From contig NC_133618.1 in assembly GCF_048593235.1 (NCBI RefSeq), positions 33,080,478-33,144,477 of the forward strand: DNA of 64,000 nucleotides, read 5' to 3'. Shown here in pieces: positions 17,701 to 31,810 of this stretch. Every line of letters starts with the position of its first letter. Position 1 is the stretch's first letter. Under the pieces are notes generated by a model. The model was not told the origin of the DNA. It saw only the letters and a list, made by a program, of their open reading frames with translations, and did not search any database. This DNA comes from Sminthopsis crassicaudata (lineage: Eukaryota). The position numbers and the translations under genes were made by a program.

Positions 17701-18239
17701 CTCCTCGAGATTGTCCTCCTTTGCCTGCACACATGCAGGGCTTCAGGAGCAGGGCGGGACATAAACCTGTGTTGCCGAATTTGTGCTTCGCTCTGTGCAT
17801 TAGGTAGGTGCGATATTATCCCCATTTAACAGTTGAGGAAACTGAGGCTGTTACATGCTCAGGATACAACTGGTAAACCTTGTGGTTGGATTTGAATTCA
17901 GGCCTTATTGACTCCAGGCCCACTGCTCTCTTCCGGCCCACTGCTCTCTTCAGTACCACTGTTTGGTGCAGTGCCTGGTATAGAGTAGGTACTCAATAAA
18001 TGCTTATTATCTGCCTGACTCCTAGTTCTGCCCTATTGGGCTAAGAAAACAAATCGAGGGGCAGCTCTTTAAAAAGTTGAAGGCAAATGTCACGTGCTTG
18101 AGTCAGACACCCTCAGTCTTTCCGAATATGAAATGGGCTCAAGACAATTACCACCCTGATGGGTTTTACGGAGTACCGAGTGCTCCCACCCAGCAAGCGC
18201 TTTTCGTTCGTTCGGTTGTCCAAGCACTGATTTTTTTTC

Positions 18240-18808
18240 TTTGATTCATGCGTGCTCGCATGCACGTATTCAGGGGGTGTCCGTTCTGGCCAGCCCGGCT
18301 GGAGCCTCCGGGGCGGGCGGGGCGGAACCGCGCAGCTCTGCGGGCGCTCGCAGCTGTGCCTTCCATCCCCAGCTGTCAAACCTCGGAGCCCCGCCTCCCA
18401 CCAGGGCTCGGATCATCGAGCTTTCTCATTGGCCAAAAGCCTCGCCCAGAGAGCTCGATCCTATGAGAAACCGAGGCCACGGCCGCTGCCTTAAAAAAAA
18501 AATTCGGGCCATCTGACTTCCAAGGCCAATGGGAACGCAGGATTGAGGATGCCTTTTCCATCCGCAGCCCTGACGGACCGCTATGCCCGCCCTCCCAGGC
18601 ACTGATTGGGCAGGCCGCGTGAGCTCGGCCTCCCATTGGCCAGCTCTGCGGGAAAGGGGCCGGTGGGGAGGGTGGTCGCGGGAGCGCTGAGTCAGCTGCT
18701 GCAGACCGGGCTGGGTGGGGTTGTGGGCTGCACCTGGTCCTGAGCGGGGCCAGAGGGGCCGGTCGCTGCGGGTCCCCGCCGCCTGCCGCCGCCGCGCCCG
18801 CCGCCGCC
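18240..18808 (+). promoter_or_regulatory. CpG-island promoter of the RNF181-VAMP5 chimeric gene, with four CCAAT boxes and GC boxes
   Basis: CpG-rich. ATTGG/CCAAT at about 18427, 18526, 18605 and 18633; gggcggggcgg at about 18312. Strong Kozak context gccgccgccATGG. Confidence 0.75.
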
Positions 18809-21800
18809 ATGGAGAACTTCCCCGAGGAGATGGATGAAGAGCAGTACTGGCAGAACGAGCTGCTGCATCTGGCGCGGTGGGCGGGGCTGGCCATCTCTGG
18901 GGATTATCCGGGTCCGCCTTGGCGGGGCGGGGATTATCCGGGGCTGGCCGCTAGTGCGGGGCTGGAAGAGGGTGCAGAGGCCGCCTCGCCCAGCGATTTG
19001 GGGGTGGGGGTGGGGATAGGGATTATCCTAGGGTTCCCTAGTCTAAGGATAGGGATTATCCGGGGCTGTCCAGTCTGGGGATACGGATTATCCGGAGCTG
19101 TCCAGGAGAGAGAAGGGGGTAATCCAGAGATTGAGGGATTATCCGGGGGTTGCCTAGAATGGGGTTTTCTTGTTCAAAAATGGGGGATTATCAGGGGGGG
19201 GTCACTTTTCCAGGCTAGGGATTATCCGCGGTTGTCTGTATAGCGCAAACTGGAGGCTATGGGGGCGGGGGAAGATTGCCCGGGGGTTGCCTAGTGGAGT
19301 AGCACTCGGGTTCTCCTCGTCCGGAGAGGAGGAATTACCTGGGATCACCAGGTTAGAGATTATTGGGGGGCGGGGCGAGGCTGACCAGTCCTGACTTCAG
19401 GTTCCTGAGGACCACATTTGTTCAGCCTGGGGATTGTGTGGAAGGGAGAGAGGAGGTGTGTGCTGGGGGCNNNNNNNNNNNNNNNNNNNNNNNNNNNNNN
19501 NNNNNNNNNNNNNNNNNNNNNNNNNNNNNNNNNNNNNNNNNNNNNNNNNNNNNNNNNNNNNNNNNNNNNNNNNNNNNNNNNNNNNNNNNNNNNNNNNNNN
19601 NNNNNNNNNNNNNNNNNNNNNNNNNNNNNNNNNNNNNNNNNNNNNNNNNNNNNNNNNNNNNNNNNNNNNNNNNNNNNNNNNNNNNNNNNTTGGGAGTTAG
19701 GGATTGGGGATTATTTAGGGGTTGAGTTTATGGAATGGGGAGATAACCAGGAAATTATCGGGGGAGCACTGATCCCCAGATTGGAGATTCTCCCTGTTCG
19801 CCCTACGATTTGGAATGGGACATCGGGGCCAAACGGGGTTTCTGGTGTGGAACGGGCGAGGGAAGGGGGATTACATTTGGAGCCAGGGATTAGGAGAGAG
19901 GAGAGAGTTTGTAGGGAAGTGTCCCGAGAAGGGCATTGTGGGAGGGCAGGGGTGGGGCTTCGGGAGGGCTCGGTTGATTGGGGGAAGGATCTAGTCCCTC
20001 AGAAGACCCAAGGCTGAGATTTATCTGGGAAAAGGGGGGCTGGGAGTCTGGATTATTGGGGTGTGTGTTTTCACTGCTCTGCTATGACTCAACCATCTTT
20101 GCAGTGAACTTTTTTTTTTGGTCCTCGTTTTTCTATCATGTTCATTTCTCAATTTACATTTCCACCCACTCCTACATTAAACTTACTCTACAACCAAAAT
20201 GCACACTCAGACAAAACGGGGGGGGGGGGGGGGAGAATAGTTCTGACCATGGATCCAGCCACTTTCTGTTCCCATGGATACGTTTCCCCCCTCCCAGACT
20301 GAGAGGAGAGAGGCCGGTCTTCAACAATCCCCTGGAAGTGAGATTGTCATGAGACTTCCCCACTATTTTAGAGCTGGCTTCTTTTTCCTTTGTGTAATTA
20401 TTGTGCATATCATTTCCCTGATTTTCTTCTTTCTGCATCTCTCTATGCCAGTCCCACCATGTGTCTATATTCATGATGGTCCTTTCTCACAGAGCTTATC
20501 CTGTTTCATTCATGAGCCATTACTCAGTCATTTTCCACCCACCCGACTTTGTCTCCAATCATCCGCTTTGTTTGTGAAACAAAAATAATGCCATGAATAT
20601 ATTGGCATATTCGGGGACTTTCTTTCTGCCCAGGACACTTTTCAATGGGATGGGCATTGAGCTGCCAACAGGTGAGCTCTTTAGCTGGGAAAACCGACTT
20701 CCTCCCCCTGCTGCCAAGAGAGCCGTGGAGAACCTGCCAAAATCCACCATCACAGGGGCCCAGGCTGGTGAGGGGCCTCCTTCCCCCCAGCCCTCTCTCA
20801 TCTCTGACACTTCCCTGTTAACCTGTTTGACCTTTATGGAACTAACATTATTCCCTCCCCTTCTTCCGCTACCCAGCATGCAACCAACTCCCCGTTCAAT
20901 CTTTCAGACCAGGCTGGGTGAACAAAAAACATCCAAATGAGTGACTGACCTGCCTTTGAGGAGGCAACACTGGGAGGGATGGGGGTGGGCAGGTGGAGGA
21001 AGCAGGTCTTGATCTGATGGACTTCCCCTCACAGACGCAGGTGTCAAATGCCCTGTATGTCTTCTGGAGTTTGAGGAGGAGCAGACTGCCCTGGAGATGC
21101 CCTGTGAGCATCTATTTCATTCAGACTGCATCGTGCCCTGGCTAGGCAAGGTATCCACAGCTTCCCATCCCGCCCTGGTACCCAGCCCCGTTAGTATGTG
21201 GCCCTGCCCATAGATCCTGAGTGTTGGGGATGACCAAAAGAAGCTTTCTTCTAAACACGAACTTAAGCCTCTGAGGGGGGGAGAGAGGTGAGGGAGAAAT
21301 GGATCCTGAACCATCTTCATCCCCACTCTGTCTTCCCAGACCAACAGTTGCCCTCTGTGCAGATATGAGCTGCCTACAGACAATGAGGACTATGAAGATT
21401 ACAGAAGAGAAAAGGTAGGGCTGGCCTCGGGGGCATGAGGAGTTGTTCCTTCCCCTAAACTGCAGTGTAGACAGGAGACTGGAGCAAACCATGCAGCCTT
21501 GCCCCCCTGGTGAGGTCAGAAGATCAGGATTTGAGTGTTAATGAGAAAGAGATGATTATCTTGATCCTATGATCCTCTTCACTCTGACCATTTGTAATGA
21601 TTCCAAGGAAGTAGAAGGGCCCTGGTCATGTCTTTCCCCCAAGAACTCCTACCCACAAGTTCACCAGAAAGTTCCATGGCAGATTTGGGTGTATGGGGAA
21701 GTGGGTTCCACGAGGACCCAACCTAATGTGGGCCTTCTTGCCAGTCAGGGAAGGATCCAGAGATGTGCCTGGATCCTGCTGAAAGGAGGGAACGTCTCCT

Positions 21801-22706
21801 CTCAGACCAGGTCTGTACTAAGGGTTAGGGGGAGGGATGGGAGAAGGGAATGTGGGATCCCTGTACTTGAGTAATGTGGGGCTCCCTAGAATGGGCATGT
21901 GGCGGGCAGGAACTCTCCACTTGGCCTGTGTTGCTGTCGGGCTGAGGTTCTGAGGCTGCTGAAGGCCTATGGAGTTGGGAGTTCTTAAGAACAGAGGGGG
22001 AAGAGGATCAATAAGGGTAATGAGGCTTGCTGAGGAAGGTCAGTTAGGGTAAAGGGAATTTGGTCCTAATTGCTCAGTACAGGGTGATAAGCAGTAAGTG
22101 GACCAGTCCTGCATCAGAGATGGAGCCCTTCCAAGAAGATGGCAGGGGAAGGGTCTAACCAACACAAGTTAGAGAGTGAGCTGGGGATGGGAGGGCAACG
22201 GGAGATGAAAAATGAAAGAAGTATCCCTCTGCAAGGGGAGAGTGAATTGTTTGTGAGGCAGTGAGTTTCCTTTTGTGGGAGGATTCTTATTCAGGTCCAA
22301 TCTCGTCTCCCCCAGCTCAAGGGTTCAAGAGAAAGGTGGGTCTGGGAACTGAGGGAGAATTGCTGGGGACAGAAGGGCTGCCTTGGAGGCTTCAGAGGGA
22401 GAGGGTTTGGGTGATTCGAATACCCCTCTGATCCATATTGATAAACCCTGTTGGCTCCTGCTGTTCCAGAATGCTTTTGCCAGGGCCAACAAGGCCCTGG
22501 CCCTTAAACAGCCTTGGGCAGACTTGGATGGGAACATCCGATGCCGCCTCTTCTTGGGTCTGATCATCACGGCCTTAATGCTGCCCCTCTTGAAGTGGAT
22601 TATTGTGGCTACCACGGAGCGTCCTGTGAATCTTCATAACCCGGCAGCGTGGCATCAGGGGGCCACAGCCAAAGGTTGGGGCTTCGATCCAAGACCAGGA
22701 GACTAA
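18809..22706 (+). CDS. Chimeric RNF181-like RING-H2 E3 ligase with a VAMP5-derived C-terminal transmembrane anchor (about 209-242 aa depending on linker exons)
   Basis: RNF181-type exons 18809-18876, 20634-20767, 21035-21150 and 21340-21414, all GT-AG and with the same phases as canonical RNF181. Intact RING: CPVC...CEHLFHSDC...CPLC. Candidate linker exons 21745-21823 (79 nt) and 22316-22335 (20 nt). Terminal exon 22470-22706: [46 protein letters not shown]...PRPGD*. Confidence 0.75.
18897..19790 (+). repeat. Degenerate G-rich repeat (core gggattatccggg) in intron 1 of the chimeric copy, interrupted by an N-gap
   Basis: More than ten spaced copies of ggattatcc or variants; same core as the RNF181 intron-1 minisatellite. 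Confidence 0.75.
21745..21823 (+). CDS. Candidate linker exon, a degenerate and shortened VAMP5 exon-2 homologue
   Basis: Acceptor ccttcttgccag. Encodes SGKDPEMC...SDQ, versus VAMP5 exon 2 AGKELERC...SDQLLDM. Possible donors at 21810 (cag|gtctgt) and 21823 (agg|gttagg). Confidence 0.45.
22470..22706 (+). CDS. VAMP5-derived terminal exon (juxtamembrane region, TM helix, tail)
   Basis: Aligns to the VAMP5 last exon as recalled: [27 protein letters not shown] (mouse) versus [31 protein letters not shown]. Ends PRPGD*, versus human SGPGN*. Phase-0 acceptor ctgttccag. Confidence 0.78.
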   Translation, partial: NAFARANKALALKQPWADLDGNIRCRLFLGLIITALMLPLLKWIIVATTERPVNLHNPAAWHQGATAKGWGFDPRPGD

Positions 22707-22898
22707 AGTGGATCATGGGGAAAGAGAAGCCAACCCCGCCCAACCATTGGGTCCCACTAAGGAACACTGGTTGGTGCTGGAGTTGAAGAAACCCTGGGGA
22801 GCCCTCTTTGGTGGGCTTGGTTCCACCAGTTGTACCCTTGCACGCTGACCCCCGCCCCCAGGGGTACAAAGTAAATCACCCCTTGCTATATAGAGCTG

Positions 22899-22904
22899 AA
22901 TAAA
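22899..22904 (+). terminator. Polyadenylation signal AATAAA of the chimeric gene
   Basis: About 190 nt after the stop at 22706, followed by GU/U-rich sequence (ctcattctgtgtg). Confidence 0.7.
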
Positions 22905-24399
22905 AATCCCACTAGGGTAAAAGGAATTCTCATTCTGTGTGAAGTGCTCTGGGGAGGTTCCCTACCTGGGGAGGTGGTGACAGATTGGTTAGGAAATCTG
23001 TTTCCCATTCTCAAAGGACATCCTAATTTAGATGGATTTTTCCAGTCATCTCCATTGTTGACTCTCTACATCCAGAGTTTTTTCCCCTTGCTTCTCAAGC
23101 TGGAGACAAGCTACCCAGGAATCAGAGAACCTGGATGCAAAGCTCATCCCAATACTTATCATTCTCATGATCTTGGCCAAGTCCCAAATGGGAAGGTTGA
23201 ATTAAATAGTCTCTAAGGTCTTTCACTCGTCTAAAGTTATGATCCTCCAGAAAGTTTTGGAGGCCCTTTACATGGGCAGCTCAAGTGGAAACTAGAGTCA
23301 TGAAGCAGTACATAAGAACCCTTGATGACTACATATCAACTTGGCTTTAAAATATAATATTTAAATTTTTATTGCATTCTAATTTGTTAATCAGTTTCCT
23401 AGTACAGTTTAATCTGGTTTGACCCCTGTGTATAGGGCATAAGGAGGCTCCTTCCCTGGCCCTAACAGCCCCATTCCAACTTCTTAAACCCTGATCTTCC
23501 CCCTTTTTCTGAGCCTTCTCAGCTATTCCTTTACTCTTATATAAAATATGAACAGGAGGGAAGGGACCCTAAAGTTTGTTCCCAAAGTTTAATCTCCTGG
23601 ACAAATACAAGCAATTATTTTTGTTCTAATCATCATATTTTCTTTCACCCCCAATTCCACCCAAAGCATTCTTCCGGGAGGCACATCAGGCAAGGGCATC
23701 CTTCTCTGGCAACCCTTGAGTGGAGAGTGGGAGAGAGAATGCATCATTATTTGTGGGAGACAAGCAGGAAACAGACCCAGAGTTGTCAGGGTGGATTAAC
23801 TATTAGAGAAATGTCAGAGGCCTGGACAGGCTGGGATTTTGGCCAGGTGGGACGAGAAATCTGATTTTATGAAAGGGCAGATGGTACCTTTTGGGACTGC
23901 TCTTGGTTCTCCTGCTCCCTGAGAGCCCATGGGCACCCAAAGCAAAGAGTCTGGGGTGGGAAGCCCCTCACCACTGCCTCAGAACTTAGTGAGGTCCACT
24001 TGGCCGACATCGGGGTGGGGGTGTGAAAGACGGATCAGTGGGCATTTAGGTAGTGCCTGCTATGTGCCAGGCACAGTGCTGAGGCAGAGCTGGGAAGAGC
24101 TACTCCAGTCCTCAAGGACATGTTGGAGTCAAAGTTCTGGGTTCAAAGTCCAGAAATGCTACTTTGGGACCCTGCACTCCGTGTCAGTATCCAGCAATCC
24201 ATCCAAAGGTTGCATTGGATGCTCTTTGATACTCTTTTTCGATATAAGTACAATGAAGTGAGAGAAGCAAAGTACGACCCAGGAATGGCCCGGGTCCACA
24301 AAGGCAACCCTCCTGGAGGCAGTGAGACTGAAGCCCAGTCTCCGAGGTTAAGTGGCCATTGGGTTAAGTGGGAGAAGAGCTCAGGCGGCTGGGGGGCAG

Positions 24400-24736
24400 C
24401 ACTGAGCCAGCATAGGCGGGCCCAGCTCCGACCTGAAACCCGCTCTGGCTCCGCCTCCTGCGGGTAGCAACCAATGAAAACCTAAATTCGCGGGAAGCCT
24501 TCATTGGCTCGAGCTTTACACCACCTGATTCACAAAGACCAATAGAAAATTATCTTTGGGGTTTCCGGGATCTCATAGTCCCGGTGGGGCGTGGAGCCTT
24601 CCTTATCGTGGTTCTGATTGGACGTTCGGGACGGAGCTAGTTCTCCCATTGGCCAGAGTGGCGCGAAAAGGGAGGGATCTTTTAGTGCAGCATCATAGCG
24701 TCAGGGGTCGCTCGCCGGCTAGGATTCACGGTTGCC
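24400..24736 (+). promoter_or_regulatory. RNF181 CpG promoter with five CCAAT boxes
   Basis: CCAAT/ATTGG at about 24471, 24503, 24539, 24617 and 24648. ctcccattggccag is shared with the upstream copy's promoter. Confidence 0.75.
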
Positions 24737-27412
24737 ATGGCGTCCTATTTTGAGGAGCACGACTGTGAGCCGGGAGTGCCTGAGGAACAGTATCGACAGA
24801 ATGCGCTCCTGGAGTTGGCACGGTACGCGGGGGGGTCATCGCCCGGGGCTGGGCCGGGACGTGACCCCTCCGGAGGGATGAGAGGAAGGGGGCTCTAACC
24901 GGGGGTTCGGGAGGGGCCGTTATCCGGGACTCCGGAGCGTTCGGAGGGGAGCACTATCCGAGGTTCTGGAGGGTTGGGAAGGAGCGTTATTGGGGGTTCT
25001 GGAGGGATGGGAGGGGGGCGTTATCCGGGGTTCTGGAGGGTTGGGAGGAGACATTAACGGGGGTTTTGGAGGGATGGGAGGGGGCCGTTATCGTAGGCTC
25101 CGGGGGGATCCTAGGGATGGGAGGGGGGCTATCAGGGGTTCCGGAGGGATGGGAGGGGGAGCTATCTGGGGATCTGAAGGGATGGGAGGGGGCATTATTC
25201 GGAGCTCTGGAGGATTGGGAGGGGGCGTTATCCGAGGCTCTGGAGGAATGGGAGGGGGAGCTGTCCGGAGTTCCGGAGGGATGGGAGGGGGCATTATTTG
25301 GAGCTCTGGAGGAATGGGAGGGGGGATTATCCGGGGTTCCGGAGGGATGGGAGGGGGGATTATCCGGGGTTCCGGAGGAATGGGAGGGGGGATTATCCGG
25401 GGTTCCGGAGGGATGGGAGGGGGGGCTATCCAAGTCTCAGGAGGGATGGGAGGGGGGGCTATCTGGGGATCTGAAGGGATGGGAGGGGGCATTATTCGGA
25501 GCTCTGGAGGATTGGGAGGGGGCGCTATCCGAGGCTCTGGAGGAATGGGAGGGGGAGCTGTCCAGAGTTCCGGAGGGATGGGAGGGGGGATTACCCAGGG
25601 CTCCGGAGGAATGAGAAGGAGTGCTGTCCGAATTTCAGGAGGGATGGGAGGGGGTGCTGCCCTGGGTTCTGGAGGGATGGGAAGGGGCATTATTCGGGAC
25701 TCTGAGGAAGGGATGATCCATATATTCTTCAGGGGTCCCAGAAGGCTCTTGGGACCAGAGGAGGAAATTATTGAGCCAGTTCCTAGGGGTGACAGGGGCA
25801 CCAAGGAAGCAGTTATTGAAGTAGGAAGTCCTGGGCTAGGACCTTAGAGGCTTTAGAGACATCGGGGCCCTGGAGTTAGAAGTTCTGTGGGTGAGAGTGC
25901 CAAGAAGGAGGGATTATTATTACGGGGATCTAACAGCTCTCTCCCCACCCCCAAATCCTTTTCCCAGGACACTGTTCAATGGGATGGACATTGAGCTGGC
26001 ATCTGCGGACTTCACAGACTGGGACCATCGCCTGCCCCCGCCTGCTGCCAAGAGAGCTGTCCAGAGCCTGCCAAAAGCCATCATCACGGGGGCCCAGGCT
26101 GGTGAGGGGCCTCCTTCCGCCAATCCCTTTCCATTTCCAGCCAGCTTCATTACTTCTGCAGCCAGTGCAGACCCCTCTTCCTCCCCCTCGAATACTCCTG
26201 GCTTTTAGTTGGCTTGGAAGGAAATTTGAATCAAGATTCTCCTGAGTGCAAGGAGAGCAGGCTGCTTTTGAGGCCGCAGTGCTGGAATGGATTTTGGGTG
26301 GGGGGAGAGGCGAGGGCATATGTGGAAGCTAAAAAGAGCTTTTTCCCCAGATAAAGGTCTGAAGTGCCCTGTGTGCCTTCTGGAGTTTGAGGAGGAACAG
26401 ACTGCCTTGGAGATGCCCTGCCAGCACCTCTTCCATTCAGAGTGCATTCTCCCATGGCTGGGCAAGGTACCCGAGATTTCTGCACAATCCATTTCCCCCC
26501 ACCATTTGTTTACTGCACATGTCCATAGAGGAAAGTTTCATTCCTACCCTTCTTGAAATGTCAAGGGTGGAAGCCACAATTATGAGACATGACCCAAAGA
26601 ACTGAAATCAGGGGAGAAAAGTAGAAAAGGAGCCCAGAAGTGTTCACTTGCCTAAGATGCTTCCCCTCTTCTTTTAAACCTCTTAGAATCCCCAGTTTGT
26701 TCCAAGGCTGCCTCCTACATGAGGCTTTTCCTAGTCCTGCCAGTTGCTAATCACTTGGTATTTATTTTTGTGTATAAGGTGTTCCCGTCCAAGCAAGGAC
26801 AGGAATTGTCTTTGTAGCCCAGATACCTGTAGCACAGTGCCTGGCACTTAACACTTATCCAATTGAATGATCACTCCCACTGTTTATTCAGACCAACTCC
26901 TGCCCACTGTGCAGATGTGAGCTGCCCACAGACAATGAAGAGTATGAGGAGTATAAGAAAGATAAGGTAAGAAGAACAGTAGGAGACTCAGGCATTACTG
27001 ACCTGGCCCTTCTGGGCAAGGAGTATTTTACCCATGGGGGGGGGTGGCTACAGAAAGGTCAAAGGACAACCCCAGGCCTGGCCTAAAAATCAAAAGACCT
27101 CTAGTTGATATTTGACTTTGCTACTTTGTGATTGGGTAACCTTAAGTCAACCTGTCCACCATTTTAGACTTTTGACAGATCAGTAGAATCACAGGAGGGG
27201 TTTTATAAGGCTCTGGGTTGTCTTCTCACTGTACCTGTCCTTTAGGACAGACCCTGGGCAGAAGCTGAGTAACCCCCCTCCTCTTTATCTTCTGGAGATC
27301 TCAGTTGAATCAGGTGGGGTTCCCCTCACCGCTTCCTACTTTTCTCCCGTAGGCTCGGCGGCAACAGCAGCAGCATCGGCTTGAATACCTCCATGGAGCC
27401 ATGTATACATGA
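24737..27412 (+). CDS. RNF181: E3 ubiquitin-protein ligase RNF181 (canonical, 156 aa)
   Basis: Exons 24737-24822, 25968-26101, 26351-26466, 26892-26966 and 27353-27412. Protein runs [12 protein letters not shown]...LLELAR/TLFNGM...[11 protein letters not shown]...[21 protein letters not shown].../[25 protein letters not shown] at 27453-27458. Confidence 0.96.
24900..25710 (+). repeat. G-rich 33-bp minisatellite (about 22 units) in RNF181 intron 1
   Basis: Unit ggagggatgggaggggggattatccggggttcc. It generates the spurious ([11 protein letters not shown])n and ([10 protein letters not shown])n ORFs. Confidence 0.92.
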
Positions 27413-28783: not shown

Positions 28784-30344
28784 TTAGATCATGGCAATAC
28801 TCTCTGGTGTACAGTTGAGGTGAGTGGAGGTGCTGCTGCTCCCTGGAGACTTGCAGGCTCTGCTAGGGGCTGGCTGGAAGGCTGCCACCAATGTGTCTGT
28901 GGACACTGCCCCGAACTCGTAGCTGAAAGTGCCGTAGAAAACAAGGATGTCGATGACGAAGACCCATTCAGACAGGGCGGCCACATGCTGGAGCTGCGAG
29001 CTTTCATGAATGAAGAAGATACCACCTGTAGCAGAGGCTAAGGAATCCAACTAGCAGATGGGGACGGCCCTGACCCCTCCCTGACGACCTTTGGGCTACA
29101 GAAGGGGAAAAGAGAATCCCATGCCCAGAAGCCACAAGCAGCCCACCTGGGTGAACCACTGAAGCCCTTTCTTCAGCACCACTTGCCTCATCTCTACTAA
29201 TGACAAAATACCATCTGCCCGCCAGAATTGTTGGGGTGATCCCCCAAGGCCTCTGCAAACTGGCCACCTAATCTCTGGGATTGCCCTCCGTCTTCGAGGA
29301 TCGACCCCACAAAGGATACTGAGAACCAGGGCCACAAAGGCAATAATGGCGAGCACAGCACGGAAGTGGGCCATGGCGAAGTCCAGGGGAGCAGCAGCAC
29401 CATGGTAGGAGAGAGCACAGTGGAGACAGACGAAGAGGAGGCCCGCTGGGAAGGCGATTCCTGCCCCGATGTAGTGCAAAGACTTGGCGTGATCCACCTG
29501 GGCAGTGTAGACAAAGTGCTGACCAAAGCCACCCCGCCTCACCAACCCCCGGGCACGTTCACTATCCTGGCCAGAGATGGATCCGCCCCCCCTAACCCCG
29601 GGGTTTCGAGGATGGTTGGGGTCAGCAGGTGGGGCCAATGCTCAGAGAACAGTCTCACCTGGAAGTTGCCAACTACCACCAGGCCAGCAGCATTGAAGCA
29701 GCCCGTGATGAGAGCCATGGTGTTAACCCAGGACCGGTGACTCTGCTCCAGCAGCTGCCCATAGCGGAGAAGGCAGACCAAGGCCACTGTGGAAGAGAAT
29801 GGAAGGGGCTCTGAGGGACAGAGCAGCTATCTCTTAAGCACTGACTGTGCCTACGGGTTCTGAGATACAGAGCCTACTCCCAAAGGAATACAGGGCTCCT
29901 TCCACCAGATATAAGCGGGGAACATGGTGCCTCAGAGAGGGGAACACTGCCCCTGGGCCCCTAAGGGAGGGTTCAGGCCAGACCCTATCCAGGAGGTGGG
30001 AGCAGAAGCCCCAAGTCCAGCCAGGGGTTCCCCAACTTGGAGGCTTTTTAGATAGGTCTGCAGTAGAGTAGATAGTTGATGATAAACCCTTGATTGAGTA
30101 GTTGATAATAAACCCTTTCTTGGACTTAAGTCAGGCTGGAAGTAAAGGATCAGACAAACAGAGTCGGCCTTTAGCCTTTGTGGAATAAAAGGAAAACTTC
30201 CCTCCCCCTCCCGCCAGTGCATTTCTTCTTCACAAGCCTGAGCTACAGTTCAGATCACCTGATGGTGACCAAAGTAGCAGCAGATGTGGCCTAGAATGGC
30301 TCCCTCGGGACAAGGGGTCTGGGGCCAGGCCCTTCCTCACATGC

Positions 30345-30376
<32 letters not shown>

Positions 30377-31810
30377 TTAGTGGGGACCCAGAGAGGAAAA
30401 GAGGGGTCACAGATGGATGGGAAAGGAATGCAAAGGAGGCACTTACCCATGAAAGCGCCCACGTTGCCTATGAGGCTGAAGAGGCAGCTCTCAGGGGGGT
30501 ATGTGCCACATTTACTGGAAAAGGGGAATAAGGCAAGGGGGGAGTCAAAGGCAGTCAGCACAGGCAGGTGAGCTTCCCCACCCCGTCTCCCATTATCCGG
30601 GCAGGTGACTCCTCTCAATGATCTGAGGGCCCTGGGAAAGCTGGGACAAAGGGGAGGGCTCGTGCTAAAGGCAGGCCGGGGCTGGGCAGGTAGTCTTCTC
30701 AGAGGCTCCGACACTGCTTGGGACTTGATGGCACTGGAGGCTGTGGCGGGCACACAAGGAGGGGCACTTCCGGGCCTGTACCCTGCCCCCCTTAGGGGCC
30801 TCACCTGATCAGGGGGATGTCCTCCAGAGTGCAGCAGCTCTTGGGACCACCCTGTATGTTGGGGTCGGTGGAGCAGGACTCGTTGTAGGACCTGGGAGGG
30901 AGGTGGGACAGGGAGCAGACTGGGGCAAAGTGGATTCTCTGCAGCCCACCTCCTTCACCTGGGGCCTTCTCCAGGCCCTCCCCCAAAGAGCCCTCCCTCA
31001 CCAAAAGCAGAGAAGAGTCCCTTTCTCTCCACTATCCTTGAGATAGAAATCAGTAGGGAAAAAGGGCCTCGAAAGGAAGAAGGGGGATTTGGTGGGAGAC
31101 AGGGAAGGTAGGCAAGATGCCATGCCTGGGGAAAGGGTGGGTGATGCCAAAATCAGAGCACAGCAGTAAGGCCCAGGGTCGCCATCTGACTGCTGCCAGC
31201 CCCTGAGCCCAAAAAAGGAGCAGAGATGGAGGAAGCCTTTAGAAGGAGGGTGCCAGGACTGTTCTCCATACCAGTTCTCCACAGGACACACATGGTGGTT
31301 CATCACTGCCATGGCATACCTGCAAGGGCAGAGGGCATCACTCGCGCCGTTCCCCACCTCTGTACCTGTCAGACCCCGCCATCCGTCCAGCTCCCTCATC
31401 TGGAGTCAGATGCCATGGGGAGTGATCCCCAAGCCACGGGTCCCTGTTCTCCCACCTAGTCCCGCCTAGTGCCACTGGTGTCACTTGGTCCCAAGAGTGG
31501 TGGGTCGTTGGGACTTTGTGCCCATGCATGAGGCCAGGCTACGGGAGACGCCCGAGCGGTCCTGAGTCCCAGCACCAGAGTCTACAGCGGGACAAGGGAC
31601 CTCGTGTGTGGGAGCAAGCTGTTCTGTCCTGCCCGACTCTGTTCCTCCCTGGCCCATCTCCCCCTTCCCCCGGCCAGCCTCCTCTCTCCCACTCGTGTCT
31701 GTCCTCCTCCTCCCCTCCCCCTCGCTTCTCCCTCCCGGTACTCACACAATCCATATGCCAGTGATGGAGAAAGCTGAGAGGCTGACAGGGAGGATGACCC
31801 AGGCGGTCAT
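28784..31810 (-). CDS. TMEM150A: Transmembrane protein 150A (DRAM/TMEM150 family, 271 aa)
   Basis: Coding exons 31810-31746, 31319-31272, 30891-30805, 30514-30447, 29786-29659, 29497-29320 and 29025-28784 (816 nt total, all GT-AG). Protein runs [20 protein letters not shown]...[11 protein letters not shown]. Non-coding exon donor at 32574; ATTAAA on the minus strand at 28181-28186. Confidence 0.96.

What the first reader, a model, noticed from the sequence alone, without database searches (positions are those of the whole stretch)
21035..21414. The duplicated RING domain is old and looks purifying-selected, not a decaying pseudogene
Manual codon comparison of exons 3-4 between the two copies (64 codons) gave about 19 codons with synonymous-only differences and about 11 with amino-acid changes. 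The changes are mostly conservative (D/E, R/K, V/L, E/Q). All eight Zn ligands and the RING Trp are kept, and exon 2-4 lengths are identical (134, 116, 75 nt). One Ser differs as AGT versus TCC, implying long divergence. The upstream copy keeps the human-like CRYELP where the canonical copy has CRCELP. By contrast, exon 1 is 6 codons shorter and remodelled (MENFPEEMD versus [15 protein letters not shown]), suggesting a changed N-terminus.
Basis: partly seen in the sequence, partly recalled or inferred. Interest (0 to 1): 0.75.

Follow-up and report, generated by a model that had tools for sequence, protein, structure and literature searches.

The report
Conserved RING of marsupial RNF181-VAMP5 fusion gene
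The upstream RNF181-like RING domain is not a decaying duplicate: it belongs to an intact six-exon gene (RNF181 exons 1-4 fused to a VAMP5-derived membrane anchor) found in all eight marsupial genomes examined and annotated in twelve species, and it has been kept almost unchanged since before living marsupials diverged.

Summary
Observation confirmed exactly. Window 21035-21414 holds exons 3 and 4 (116 and 75 nt) of an upstream RNF181 copy (A). Against the canonical copy (B, 26351-26966), 64 codons give 19 synonymous-only and 11 amino-acid differences. All eight Zn ligands and the Trp are kept.

Interpretation strongly supported.
- Pairwise omega A-B is 0.11-0.14. This rejects 1 and also 0.5.
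- Copy A is intact in 8 marsupial genomes I fetched and in 12 annotated species. These span Didelphimorphia, Microbiotheria, Dasyuromorphia, Peramelemorphia and Diprotodontia.
- Its RING exons have an invariant protein sequence. All 26 inferred substitutions on the 8-species tree fall at third codon positions.
- My branch-model codon likelihood gives A-crown omega about 0 (omega=1 rejected, p=4e-18). The post-duplication stem is at 0.26.

The RING is the core of a six-exon chimeric gene, annotated by NCBI as 'RNF181-like' (231 aa). It joins RNF181 exons 1-4 to two VAMP5-derived exons that encode a C-terminal transmembrane helix. The tail is equally constrained.

Corrections: Y in CRYELP is not an ancestral or 'human-like' state (H is). 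About 10 of the 11 RING differences arose on A's stem.

The scan's earlier notes on this gene come from this same window only. No paper in the searched library describes it.

The parts
18200..19000 (+). CpG island around exon 1 of copy A, its likely own promoter
   Evidence: GC 0.66 and CpG o/e 0.79, against 0.06-0.20 in control stretches. Copy B's exon 1 region is similar (0.60, 0.76).
18809..18876 (+). Copy A exon 1 (ATG plus 22 codons plus 2 nt), 6 codons shorter than in B
   Evidence: The protein sequence is identical in the 8 marsupial genomes except one E-to-D change in Gracilinanus.
20634..20767 (+). Copy A exon 2 (134 nt)
   Evidence: It is 79% identical to B exon 2 at 25968-26101.
21035..21150 (+). 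Copy A exon 3 (116 nt), holding RING ligands C1-C6 and the Trp
   Evidence: Pfam zf-RING_2 scores 43.9 bits on this exon alone (cut-off 27.3). It is 84% identical to B exon 3.
21340..21414 (+). Copy A exon 4 (75 nt), holding RING ligands C7-C8, the Arg after C8 and an acidic stretch
   Evidence: The RING is complete across exons 3-4: zf-RING_2 scores 54.8 bits on P0122.
21745..21810 (+). Copy A exon 5 (66 nt, 22 codons), a remnant of VAMP5 exon 2
   Evidence: P0122 maps here exon by exon. The opossum equivalent is spliced 4-5-6 in the intron-less contig L011. The protein sequence is invariant in 8 species.
22470..22706 (+). Copy A exon 6 (78 codons plus TAA), the VAMP5-derived juxtamembrane region, transmembrane helix and short luminal tail
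   Evidence: tblastn of koala VAMP5 hits 22455-22592 at E 3e-6. BLASTP of the tail against VAMP5 gives E 7e-5. Residues 180-200 have hydropathy 2.3. Omega is 0.03-0.05.
22899..22904 (+). AATAAA polyadenylation signal of copy A
   Evidence: The opossum spliced contig L011 runs about 20 nt past the homologous signal.
24737..27412 (+). Copy B, the canonical RNF181 (exons 24737-24822, 25968-26101, 26351-26466, 26892-26966, 27353-27412), used as comparator
   Evidence: It translates exactly to P0138, RNF181 of Sminthopsis crassicaudata, 156 aa.

Best explanation
The stretch is exons 3-4 of a functional, marsupial-wide paralogue of RNF181, and these exons encode a complete RING-H2 domain. A segment carrying RNF181 exons 1-4 with its CpG-island promoter was duplicated upstream. 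This most likely happened on the marsupial stem lineage, and certainly before living marsupials diverged. The duplicated segment now splices into remnants of VAMP5 exons 2 and 3. The product is a 231-residue protein: an N-terminal RNF181-like substrate/E2-binding part with the RING, a short linker, one C-terminal transmembrane helix, and about 30 luminal residues. The likely mechanism (inferred) is a tail-anchored E3 ubiquitin ligase. Its cytosolic RING would recruit an E2~ubiquitin at a membrane, whereas canonical RNF181 is soluble. After duplication the protein changed quickly (stem omega 0.26 in the RING, 0.54 over exons 1-4). About 10 mostly conservative RING substitutions arose, none touching Zn ligands or E2-contact residues. 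The protein then froze under very strong purifying selection. Shown here: intact ORFs and splice sites in 8 genomes, codon-level constraint, age, RING family membership, the hydrophobic helix, and similarity of the tail to VAMP5. Inferred: ligase activity, membrane topology, and expression in this species.
For: Two copies, with only the exons alignable. Counts and ligands confirmed. Pairwise omega 0.11-0.14 rejects 1 (p about 1e-7) and 0.5 (p<1e-3), where 0.5 is expected if A had drifted neutrally since duplication. The window encodes exactly P0122 (A) and P0138 (B). A-type proteins occur in 12 marsupial species within one 90%-identity cluster. Conserved A-B-TMEM150A synteny and intact A CDS with AG/GT at all junctions are seen in 8 genomes. 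Within-A pairwise omega is 0-0.06, p 1e-4 to 1e-10. Branch model: A-crown omega=1 is rejected at p 4e-18 (RING) and 4e-25 (exons 1-4), and the stem is elevated over B (p 0.002 and 7e-12). Parsimony steps by codon position in the RING are 0/0/26. Tail omega is 0.03-0.05. An intron-less contig 100% identical to opossum exons 2-6 shows the spliced form. Pfam zf-RING_2 scores 54.8 bits. The RING of RNF126 is the best solved match, E 2.5e-14. AlphaFold pLDDT is 82-93 over residues 41-130, with a helix at 174-202. There is a single hydrophobic segment at 180-200. The tail matches VAMP5. Echidna, bat and turtle have VAMP5-RNF181-TMEM150A with a single RNF181.
Against: The only transcript-like evidence is one opossum contig from a genome assembly of unknown make-up. 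NCBI's XP models are automatic predictions. Ligase activity and membrane insertion are untested, and the helix contains a Lys and has only moderate pLDDT (58-74). The tail no longer matches Pfam Synaptobrevin, and its similarity to VAMP5 is modest (37% over 38 residues). The selection tests use my own GY94 implementation on a fixed species tree, not codeml. A pre-therian date for the duplication is not excluded (AU p 0.067).
Confidence: 0.9

Rival explanations
1. Copy A is an unprocessed pseudogene. It looks conserved only because it is compared with a very slowly evolving parent.
For: RNF181 exon 5 is missing downstream of A. Exon 1 is shortened. Exon 2 alone gives pairwise omega 0.43, not different from 0.5.
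Against: Pairwise omega for the RING rejects 0.5. Comparisons within the A lineage, which do not involve B, give 9 synonymous and 0 non-synonymous differences. A-crown omega=1 is rejected at p 4e-18. Substitutions by codon position are 0/0/26. The ORFs are intact in 8 genomes.
Confidence: 0.01
2. The RING exons of A are kept similar to B by recurrent gene conversion rather than by selection on A's own product.
For: The copies lie 5 kb apart on the same strand. A 42-nt run in exon 3 differs at only 2 positions. In the bilby both copies carry the same Ala-to-Ser change in the PPPAAKR motif.
Against: The A sequences form one clade with 100/100 support and a long stem. About 10 RING amino-acid differences are fixed and shared by all A copies. 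A-B dS is 0.65-0.93 in three species. Conversion would not produce third-position-only change among A orthologues.
Confidence: 0.03
3. The RING exons are functional, but as a soluble truncated protein (stop shortly after exon 4) or as alternative 5' exons of the downstream RNF181 gene, not as an RNF181-VAMP5 fusion.
For: Reading through the exon 4 donor gives a stop after 7 codons. An Ensembl model in the Tasmanian devil joins A exon 2 to B exons 3-5 (P0001). An opossum UniProt isoform skips exon 5 (P0133).
Against: Exons 5-6 are constrained in the fused reading frame: 72 codons are invariant with 12-20 synonymous differences per pair, p<=1e-6. The opossum intron-less contig joins 4-5-6 exactly. 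The hybrid devil model skips A's own, equally constrained RING exons.
Confidence: 0.06

Closest known systems
RNF181 (canonical, soluble RING-H2 E3 ubiquitin ligase; copy B in this window, P0138)
   Same: Exons 1-4 have the same phases and, for exons 2-4, the same lengths. The proteins are 67-68% identical overall. They share the same C3H2C3 RING with Trp and linchpin Arg, the same PPPAAKRAV motif before the RING, and the same chromosomal neighbourhood.
   Different: Copy A lacks RNF181's last exon (the coiled C-terminus ending in HGAMYT). It has a remodelled N-terminus 6 residues shorter, and it carries about 100 extra residues with a transmembrane helix. It forms a separate clade in marsupials only.
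VAMP5 (myobrevin), a tail-anchored R-SNARE
   Same: The last two exons of copy A resemble VAMP5 exons 2-3 (37% over 38 residues across the exon junction, E 7e-5). They end in a single C-terminal hydrophobic helix. In echidna, bat and turtle VAMP5 is the gene next upstream of RNF181.
   Different: About 24 codons of the SNARE motif are absent, and Pfam Synaptobrevin no longer matches (against 85.9 bits for koala VAMP5). Marsupials keep an intact VAMP5 on the same chromosome as copy A, in wombat on the same 1.68-Mb contig, so copy A is an extra gene and not the VAMP5 orthologue.
RING domains of RNF126, Praja-1 and RNF165/ARK2C (solved structures 2ect, 2l0b, 5d0i)
   Same: These are the best sequence matches among solved structures (E 2.5e-14 to 8e-12). 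The match includes the PPA-K motif preceding the RING in Praja-1.
   Different: These are soluble proteins with other domain contexts. No solved structure of RNF181 itself was found.
Chimeric genes born by duplication and fusion (for example jingwei in Drosophila, TRIM5-CypA in primates; from my own knowledge)
   Same: A partial duplicate captures the 3' exons of a neighbouring gene. A burst of change follows, and then purifying selection.
   Different: Here the partners are a RING E3 and a SNARE membrane anchor. The fusion is at least as old as crown marsupials, and it is exceptionally conserved.

Membership tests
RING-H2 zinc finger (Pfam zf-RING_2, PF13639) | Eight Zn ligands in C3H2C3 order with canonical spacing | tested here: met
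   C73, C76, C91, H93, H96, C99, C110 and C113 are present and invariant across 52 sequences.
RING-H2 zinc finger (Pfam zf-RING_2, PF13639) | Profile score above the curated cut-off | tested here: met
   54.8 bits against a cut-off of 27.3 on P0122, with profile positions 2-44 of 44 matched. Exon 3 alone scores 43.9 bits.
RING-H2 zinc finger (Pfam zf-RING_2, PF13639) | E2-contact residues (Trp in the central helix, Pro after C7, Arg after C8) | tested here: met
   W103, P111 and R114 are invariant. Their role is taken from general knowledge of RING E3s.
RING-H2 zinc finger (Pfam zf-RING_2, PF13639) | E2-dependent ubiquitin ligase activity | not testable with these tools
   Needs a biochemical assay.
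RNF181 orthologue group | RNF181 is the closest homologue and the exon phases are shared | tested here: met
RNF181 orthologue group | Conserved C-terminal exon 5 (ending HGAMYT) | tested here: not met
   There is no match above shuffled controls in 21415-24737. The gene continues into VAMP5-derived exons instead.
RNF181 orthologue group | Groups with RNF181 of other mammals in a tree, one to one | tested here: not met
   It forms a separate marsupial-only clade beside marsupial RNF181, so it is a paralogue.
Synaptobrevin/VAMP R-SNAREs (PF00957) | SNARE coiled-coil motif matching the profile | tested here: not met
   P0122 has no Synaptobrevin hit at E<=0.01, while koala VAMP5 scores 85.9 bits. 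Exon 6 alone has no Pfam hit.
Synaptobrevin/VAMP R-SNAREs (PF00957) | Single C-terminal transmembrane anchor | tested here: met
   Residues 180-200 have mean hydropathy 2.3 and are the only such segment. The model shows a helix at 174-202.
Pseudogene | Disabling mutations, or dN/dS near 1 on its own lineage | tested here: not met
   ORFs and splice sites are intact in 8 genomes. A-crown omega is about 0-0.04, and omega=1 is rejected.

The most novel reading that the evidence does not exclude
Marsupials carry a lineage-specific, tail-anchored RING E3 ubiquitin ligase. It arose at least as early as the crown-marsupial ancestor, when a partial RNF181 duplicate captured the membrane anchor of a partial VAMP5 duplicate. 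It has since been held almost invariant: 1-3 amino-acid differences in about 230 residues across all orders. Even synonymous change in its RNF181-derived exons is about half that of its neighbours. This suggests an essential membrane-localised function that eutherians lack, and perhaps an additional RNA-level constraint. Public databases annotate it only as 'RNF181-like', and no paper in the searched library describes it.
Probability: 0.75. Interest if true: 0.65.

Novelty: new variant of a known kind. Interest (0 to 1): 0.55.

Why it matters
This is a clean, datable case of a new protein architecture made from two neighbouring genes: a soluble RING ligase converted into a membrane-anchored one. 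The fusion was then fixed and held under stronger constraint than its parent for the whole marsupial radiation. It offers a testable marsupial-specific ubiquitination function. It also shows that automatic names ('RNF181', 'RNF181-like') and merged models in marsupial annotations hide a distinct gene. For the narrower question asked here, it settles that the duplicated RING is a working part of a gene and not debris.

Tried and rejected
- I searched for an RNF181 exon 5 equivalent downstream of copy A. Nothing scored above shuffled controls.
- A first exon-level protein search (exon 2 in its open stretch) gave only 2 hits, but these led to the right clusters.
- One outgroup look-up, for a Phyllostomus bat, found no record. 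I used a Myotis bat instead.
- I searched for a VAMP5 SNARE exon within the window and within 10 kb upstream of copy A in 7 other marsupials. None was found, although marsupials do have VAMP5 elsewhere on the same chromosome.
- The first branch-model script crashed on a print bug. Both were rerun.
- I considered and rejected the pseudogene and gene-conversion explanations, and the idea that Y in CRYELP is ancestral.
The annotated proteins and the opossum spliced contig use one 66-nt exon.
- I did not use the large representative-protein search, because the word search and family scans had already settled the identity.

Full report
**What is at the coordinates.** Window 21035-21414 spans exon 3 (21035-21150, 116 nt), an intron, and exon 4 (21340-21414, 75 nt) of an RNF181-like gene on the + strand. 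I call it copy A. Exon 2 lies at 20634-20767. A second copy, B, lies 5 kb downstream with exons of the same lengths at 25968-26101, 26351-26466 and 26892-26966. Between A and B only the exons and about 30 flanking bases can be aligned (79-84% identity); the introns cannot.

**The counts.** The 64 codons give 34 identical, 19 synonymous-only and 11 amino-acid changing. The comparison also shows the AGT/TCC serine and the Y/C difference after the last RING cysteine pair. All junctions are AG/GT. Exon 1 of A (18809-18876) is 6 codons shorter than that of B (24737-24822).

**First test inside the window.** I wrote a Goldman-Yang pairwise codon likelihood.
- For exons 3-4 it gives omega 0.11-0.14 and dS 0.76-0.94. 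This rejects omega=1 (p about 1e-7). It also rejects omega=0.5 (p below 1e-3), the value expected if A had drifted neutrally since the duplication while B stayed constrained.
- Exon 2 alone is less constrained (omega 0.43).
- Pfam zf-RING_2 matches exon 3 of A above the curated cut-off (43.9 bits against 27.3), about as well as exon 3 of B.

**Relatives.** I sent no joined exon model to any search tool. I searched exon 2 by reference, inside its open stretch and using the region option, then searched with a database protein that this returned.
- This found an opossum protein named 'RNF181-like' (P0050, 232 aa). Its 90%-identity cluster holds equivalents from 12 marsupial species: Monodelphis, Gracilinanus, Dromiciops, Sarcophilus, Antechinus, Sminthopsis, Macrotis, Vombatus, Phascolarctos, Trichosurus, Notamacropus and Petaurus.
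- A second cluster holds the canonical RNF181 of the same species.
- Mapping database proteins onto the window exon by exon shows that the window encodes exactly P0122 (A type, 231 aa) and P0138 (RNF181 of Sminthopsis crassicaudata). The window is therefore most likely fat-tailed dunnart.
- Copy A has six exons. After exon 4 come 21745-21810 (66 nt) and 22470-22706 (78 codons and TAA). An AATAAA follows at 22899, and exon 1 sits in a CpG island.

**Orthologous DNA.** I fetched the locus from seven other marsupials (L001-L005, L008, L010) and from echidna, a turtle and a Myotis bat (L006, L007, L009).
- All marsupials show A, then B, then TMEM150A on the opposite strand.
- The three outgroups show VAMP5, then a single RNF181, then TMEM150A.
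- All eight A copies have intact reading frames, conserved splice sites and the same TAA stop.
- The 64 residues encoded by exons 3-4 are identical in all of them.

**Selection on A's own lineage.** I joined exons inside scripts only, for the codon statistics.
- Dunnart versus opossum A: 16 synonymous and 1 non-synonymous codon differences over exons 1-4 (omega 0.02, p 6e-9), and 9 versus 0 over the RING (p 3e-6). Four other pairs give the same picture.
- I fitted a branch-model likelihood to 19 sequences on the accepted species tree, with classes for outgroups, B, the A stem and the A crown.
- For the RING the omegas are 0.066, 0.035, 0.26 and about 0. A-crown omega=1 is rejected with 2dlnL 75 (p 4e-18). 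The stem is higher than B (p 0.002) and just below 1 (p 0.047).
- For exons 1-4, A-crown omega is 0.04 (omega=1 rejected, p 4e-25). The stem is at 0.54, not different from 1 (p 0.22) and far above B (p 7e-12).
- Parsimony steps by codon position on the 8-species tree are 0/0/26 for A's RING and 5/1/48 for B's.

**Age.**
- A nucleotide tree gives the A clade 100/100 support, a long stem and very short internal branches.
- A protein tree with 35 sequences places A beside marsupial RNF181 (support 93).
- An AU test does not quite exclude a duplication before the marsupial-placental split (p 0.067). It rejects an origin outside mammals (p 0.021).
- Shared states of A and marsupial B, such as L in TALEMPC, LPK and HSDC, agree with a marsupial-stem origin.
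- The duplication is certainly older than the split of American and Australasian marsupials.

**Direction of the RING changes.** Against echidna, sauropsids and marsupial B, about 10 of the 11 differences arose on A's stem: K to A, two L to V, Q to E, two E to D, two K to R, D to E, and H to Y. One is a dunnart-specific D to E in B. The site after the last Cys-X2-Cys-Arg is H in echidna, turtle, tuatara, pangolin, mouse, bats, a monkey and chimpanzee. It is Y in A, degu and gharial, and C in all marsupial B copies. The Y is therefore derived, possibly an intermediate on the way to C, and not a retained primate-like state. I did not inspect a human sequence.

**What the RING belongs to.**
- The tail encoded by exons 5-6 resembles marsupial VAMP5 across the exon junction (37% over 38 residues, E 7e-5). 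Koala VAMP5 hits the window only at 22455-22592 (E 3e-6).
- Roughly 24 codons of the SNARE motif are missing, and Pfam Synaptobrevin no longer matches.
- The tail contains the protein's only hydrophobic segment, residues 180-200.
- AlphaFold models the RING region with pLDDT 82-93 and a helix at 174-202.
- The first 72 tail codons are invariant in protein across 8 species, with 12-20 synonymous differences per pair (omega 0.03-0.05, p at most 1e-6). The fused frame is therefore the one under selection.
- A 1261-nt intron-less contig in a public assembly is 100% identical to opossum exons 2-3-4-5-6 joined precisely. It is a spliced mRNA-derived sequence.
- Marsupials also keep an intact VAMP5 on the same chromosome, and in wombat on the same 1.68-Mb contig. 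It is not in this window, nor within 10 kb upstream of A in seven other genomes. This fits a tandem duplication spanning VAMP5 exons 2-3 and RNF181 exons 1-4.

**Likely mechanism.**
- Shown: a complete RING-H2 with all ligands and E2-contact residues; one C-terminal helix; constraint on the whole fused frame.
- Inferred from general knowledge of RING E3s and tail-anchored proteins: the N-terminal 170 residues face the cytosol and recruit an E2~ubiquitin at a membrane, giving RNF181-type ligase activity a fixed location.
- Activity, topology and expression in this species are untested.

**Known or new.** NCBI and UniProt carry automatic models named 'RNF181-like' or 'RNF181', so the gene is in databases. 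Full-text searches for RNF181 with VAMP5, RNF181 with marsupial, and VAMP5 with marsupial terms found nothing on it. The earlier scan notes on this gene are all from this same window.

**Limits.**
- The likelihood code is my own and not codeml.
- The tree topology was fixed.
- The big representative search was not used.

**Unexplained.** Third-position change in A's exons 1-4 is about half that of B and of A's own tail (50 steps on 131 sites, against 107 on 137 and 49 on 72). A's introns, however, diverge like B's.

Noticed in passing
window 18809-21414 (copy A exons 1-4) against 24737-26966 (copy B) and 21745-22706 (A tail): The synonymous rate in A's RNF181-derived exons is about half that of B and of A's own tail. 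Third-position parsimony steps are 50/131, 107/137 and 49/72. Dunnart-opossum dS is 0.17, 0.55 and 0.46. A's introns diverge like B's, and GC3 and CpG content are similar. I have no explanation.
   Followed up: partly
window 20768-21034 (copy A intron 2): This intron is unusually conserved between species (dunnart-devil K2P 0.018, dunnart-koala 0.145, dunnart-opossum 0.27). The other A and B introns in the same pairs reach 0.06-0.87.
   Followed up: no
window 19011-19105 (and degenerate copies up to about 19900, around the N gap 19471-19689) and 24909-25698: Both copies carry a 32-33-nt minisatellite with core GGATTATCCGGGG in intron 1, with 2.9 copies in A and 23.6 in B. This suggests that the duplicated segment included intron 1.
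   Followed up: partly
window 20460-20633; L011:1-270; proteins P0125, P0127, P0134, P0146: Several marsupial gene models, and the opossum spliced contig, start inside intron 1 just upstream of exon 2. This points to an alternative start that skips exon 1. The upstream ORF is not conserved between species.
   Followed up: partly
P0001 (Sarcophilus harrisii, UniProt A0A7N4P4S1): This Ensembl-type model joins copy A exon 2 to copy B exons 3-5, skipping A's own RING exons. It is either a read-through transcript or a merged annotation.
   Followed up: no
L004:14276-14488 (Macrotis lagotis copy A, last exon): The bilby has an in-frame loss of 8 codons in the luminal tail after the transmembrane helix. 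The reading frame stays intact.
   Followed up: no
Bilby proteins P0131 and P0139 (also P0126 and P0140): The same Ala-to-Ser change in the PPPAAKR motif appears in both the A and B copies of the bilby, and singly in Dromiciops A and Petaurus B. This may be a small conversion tract or a recurrent change.
   Followed up: no
P0022 (Metynnis hypsauchen, 243 aa): A fish model fuses a VAMP5-like SNARE N-terminus to a full RNF181, the opposite order to the marsupial gene. It is probably a merged annotation of neighbouring genes.
   Followed up: no
window about 29100-31400, minus strand: ORF fragments here resemble TMEM150A (Frag1/DRAM family). This matches the gene called downstream of RNF181 in all fetched loci.
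   Followed up: partly
L011:660-1261: The opossum intron-less contig repeats about 140 bases of the 3' end (L001 14135-14275 occurs twice). This looks like an assembly artefact, and the nature of assembly GCA_029782595.1 is unknown to me.
   Followed up: no
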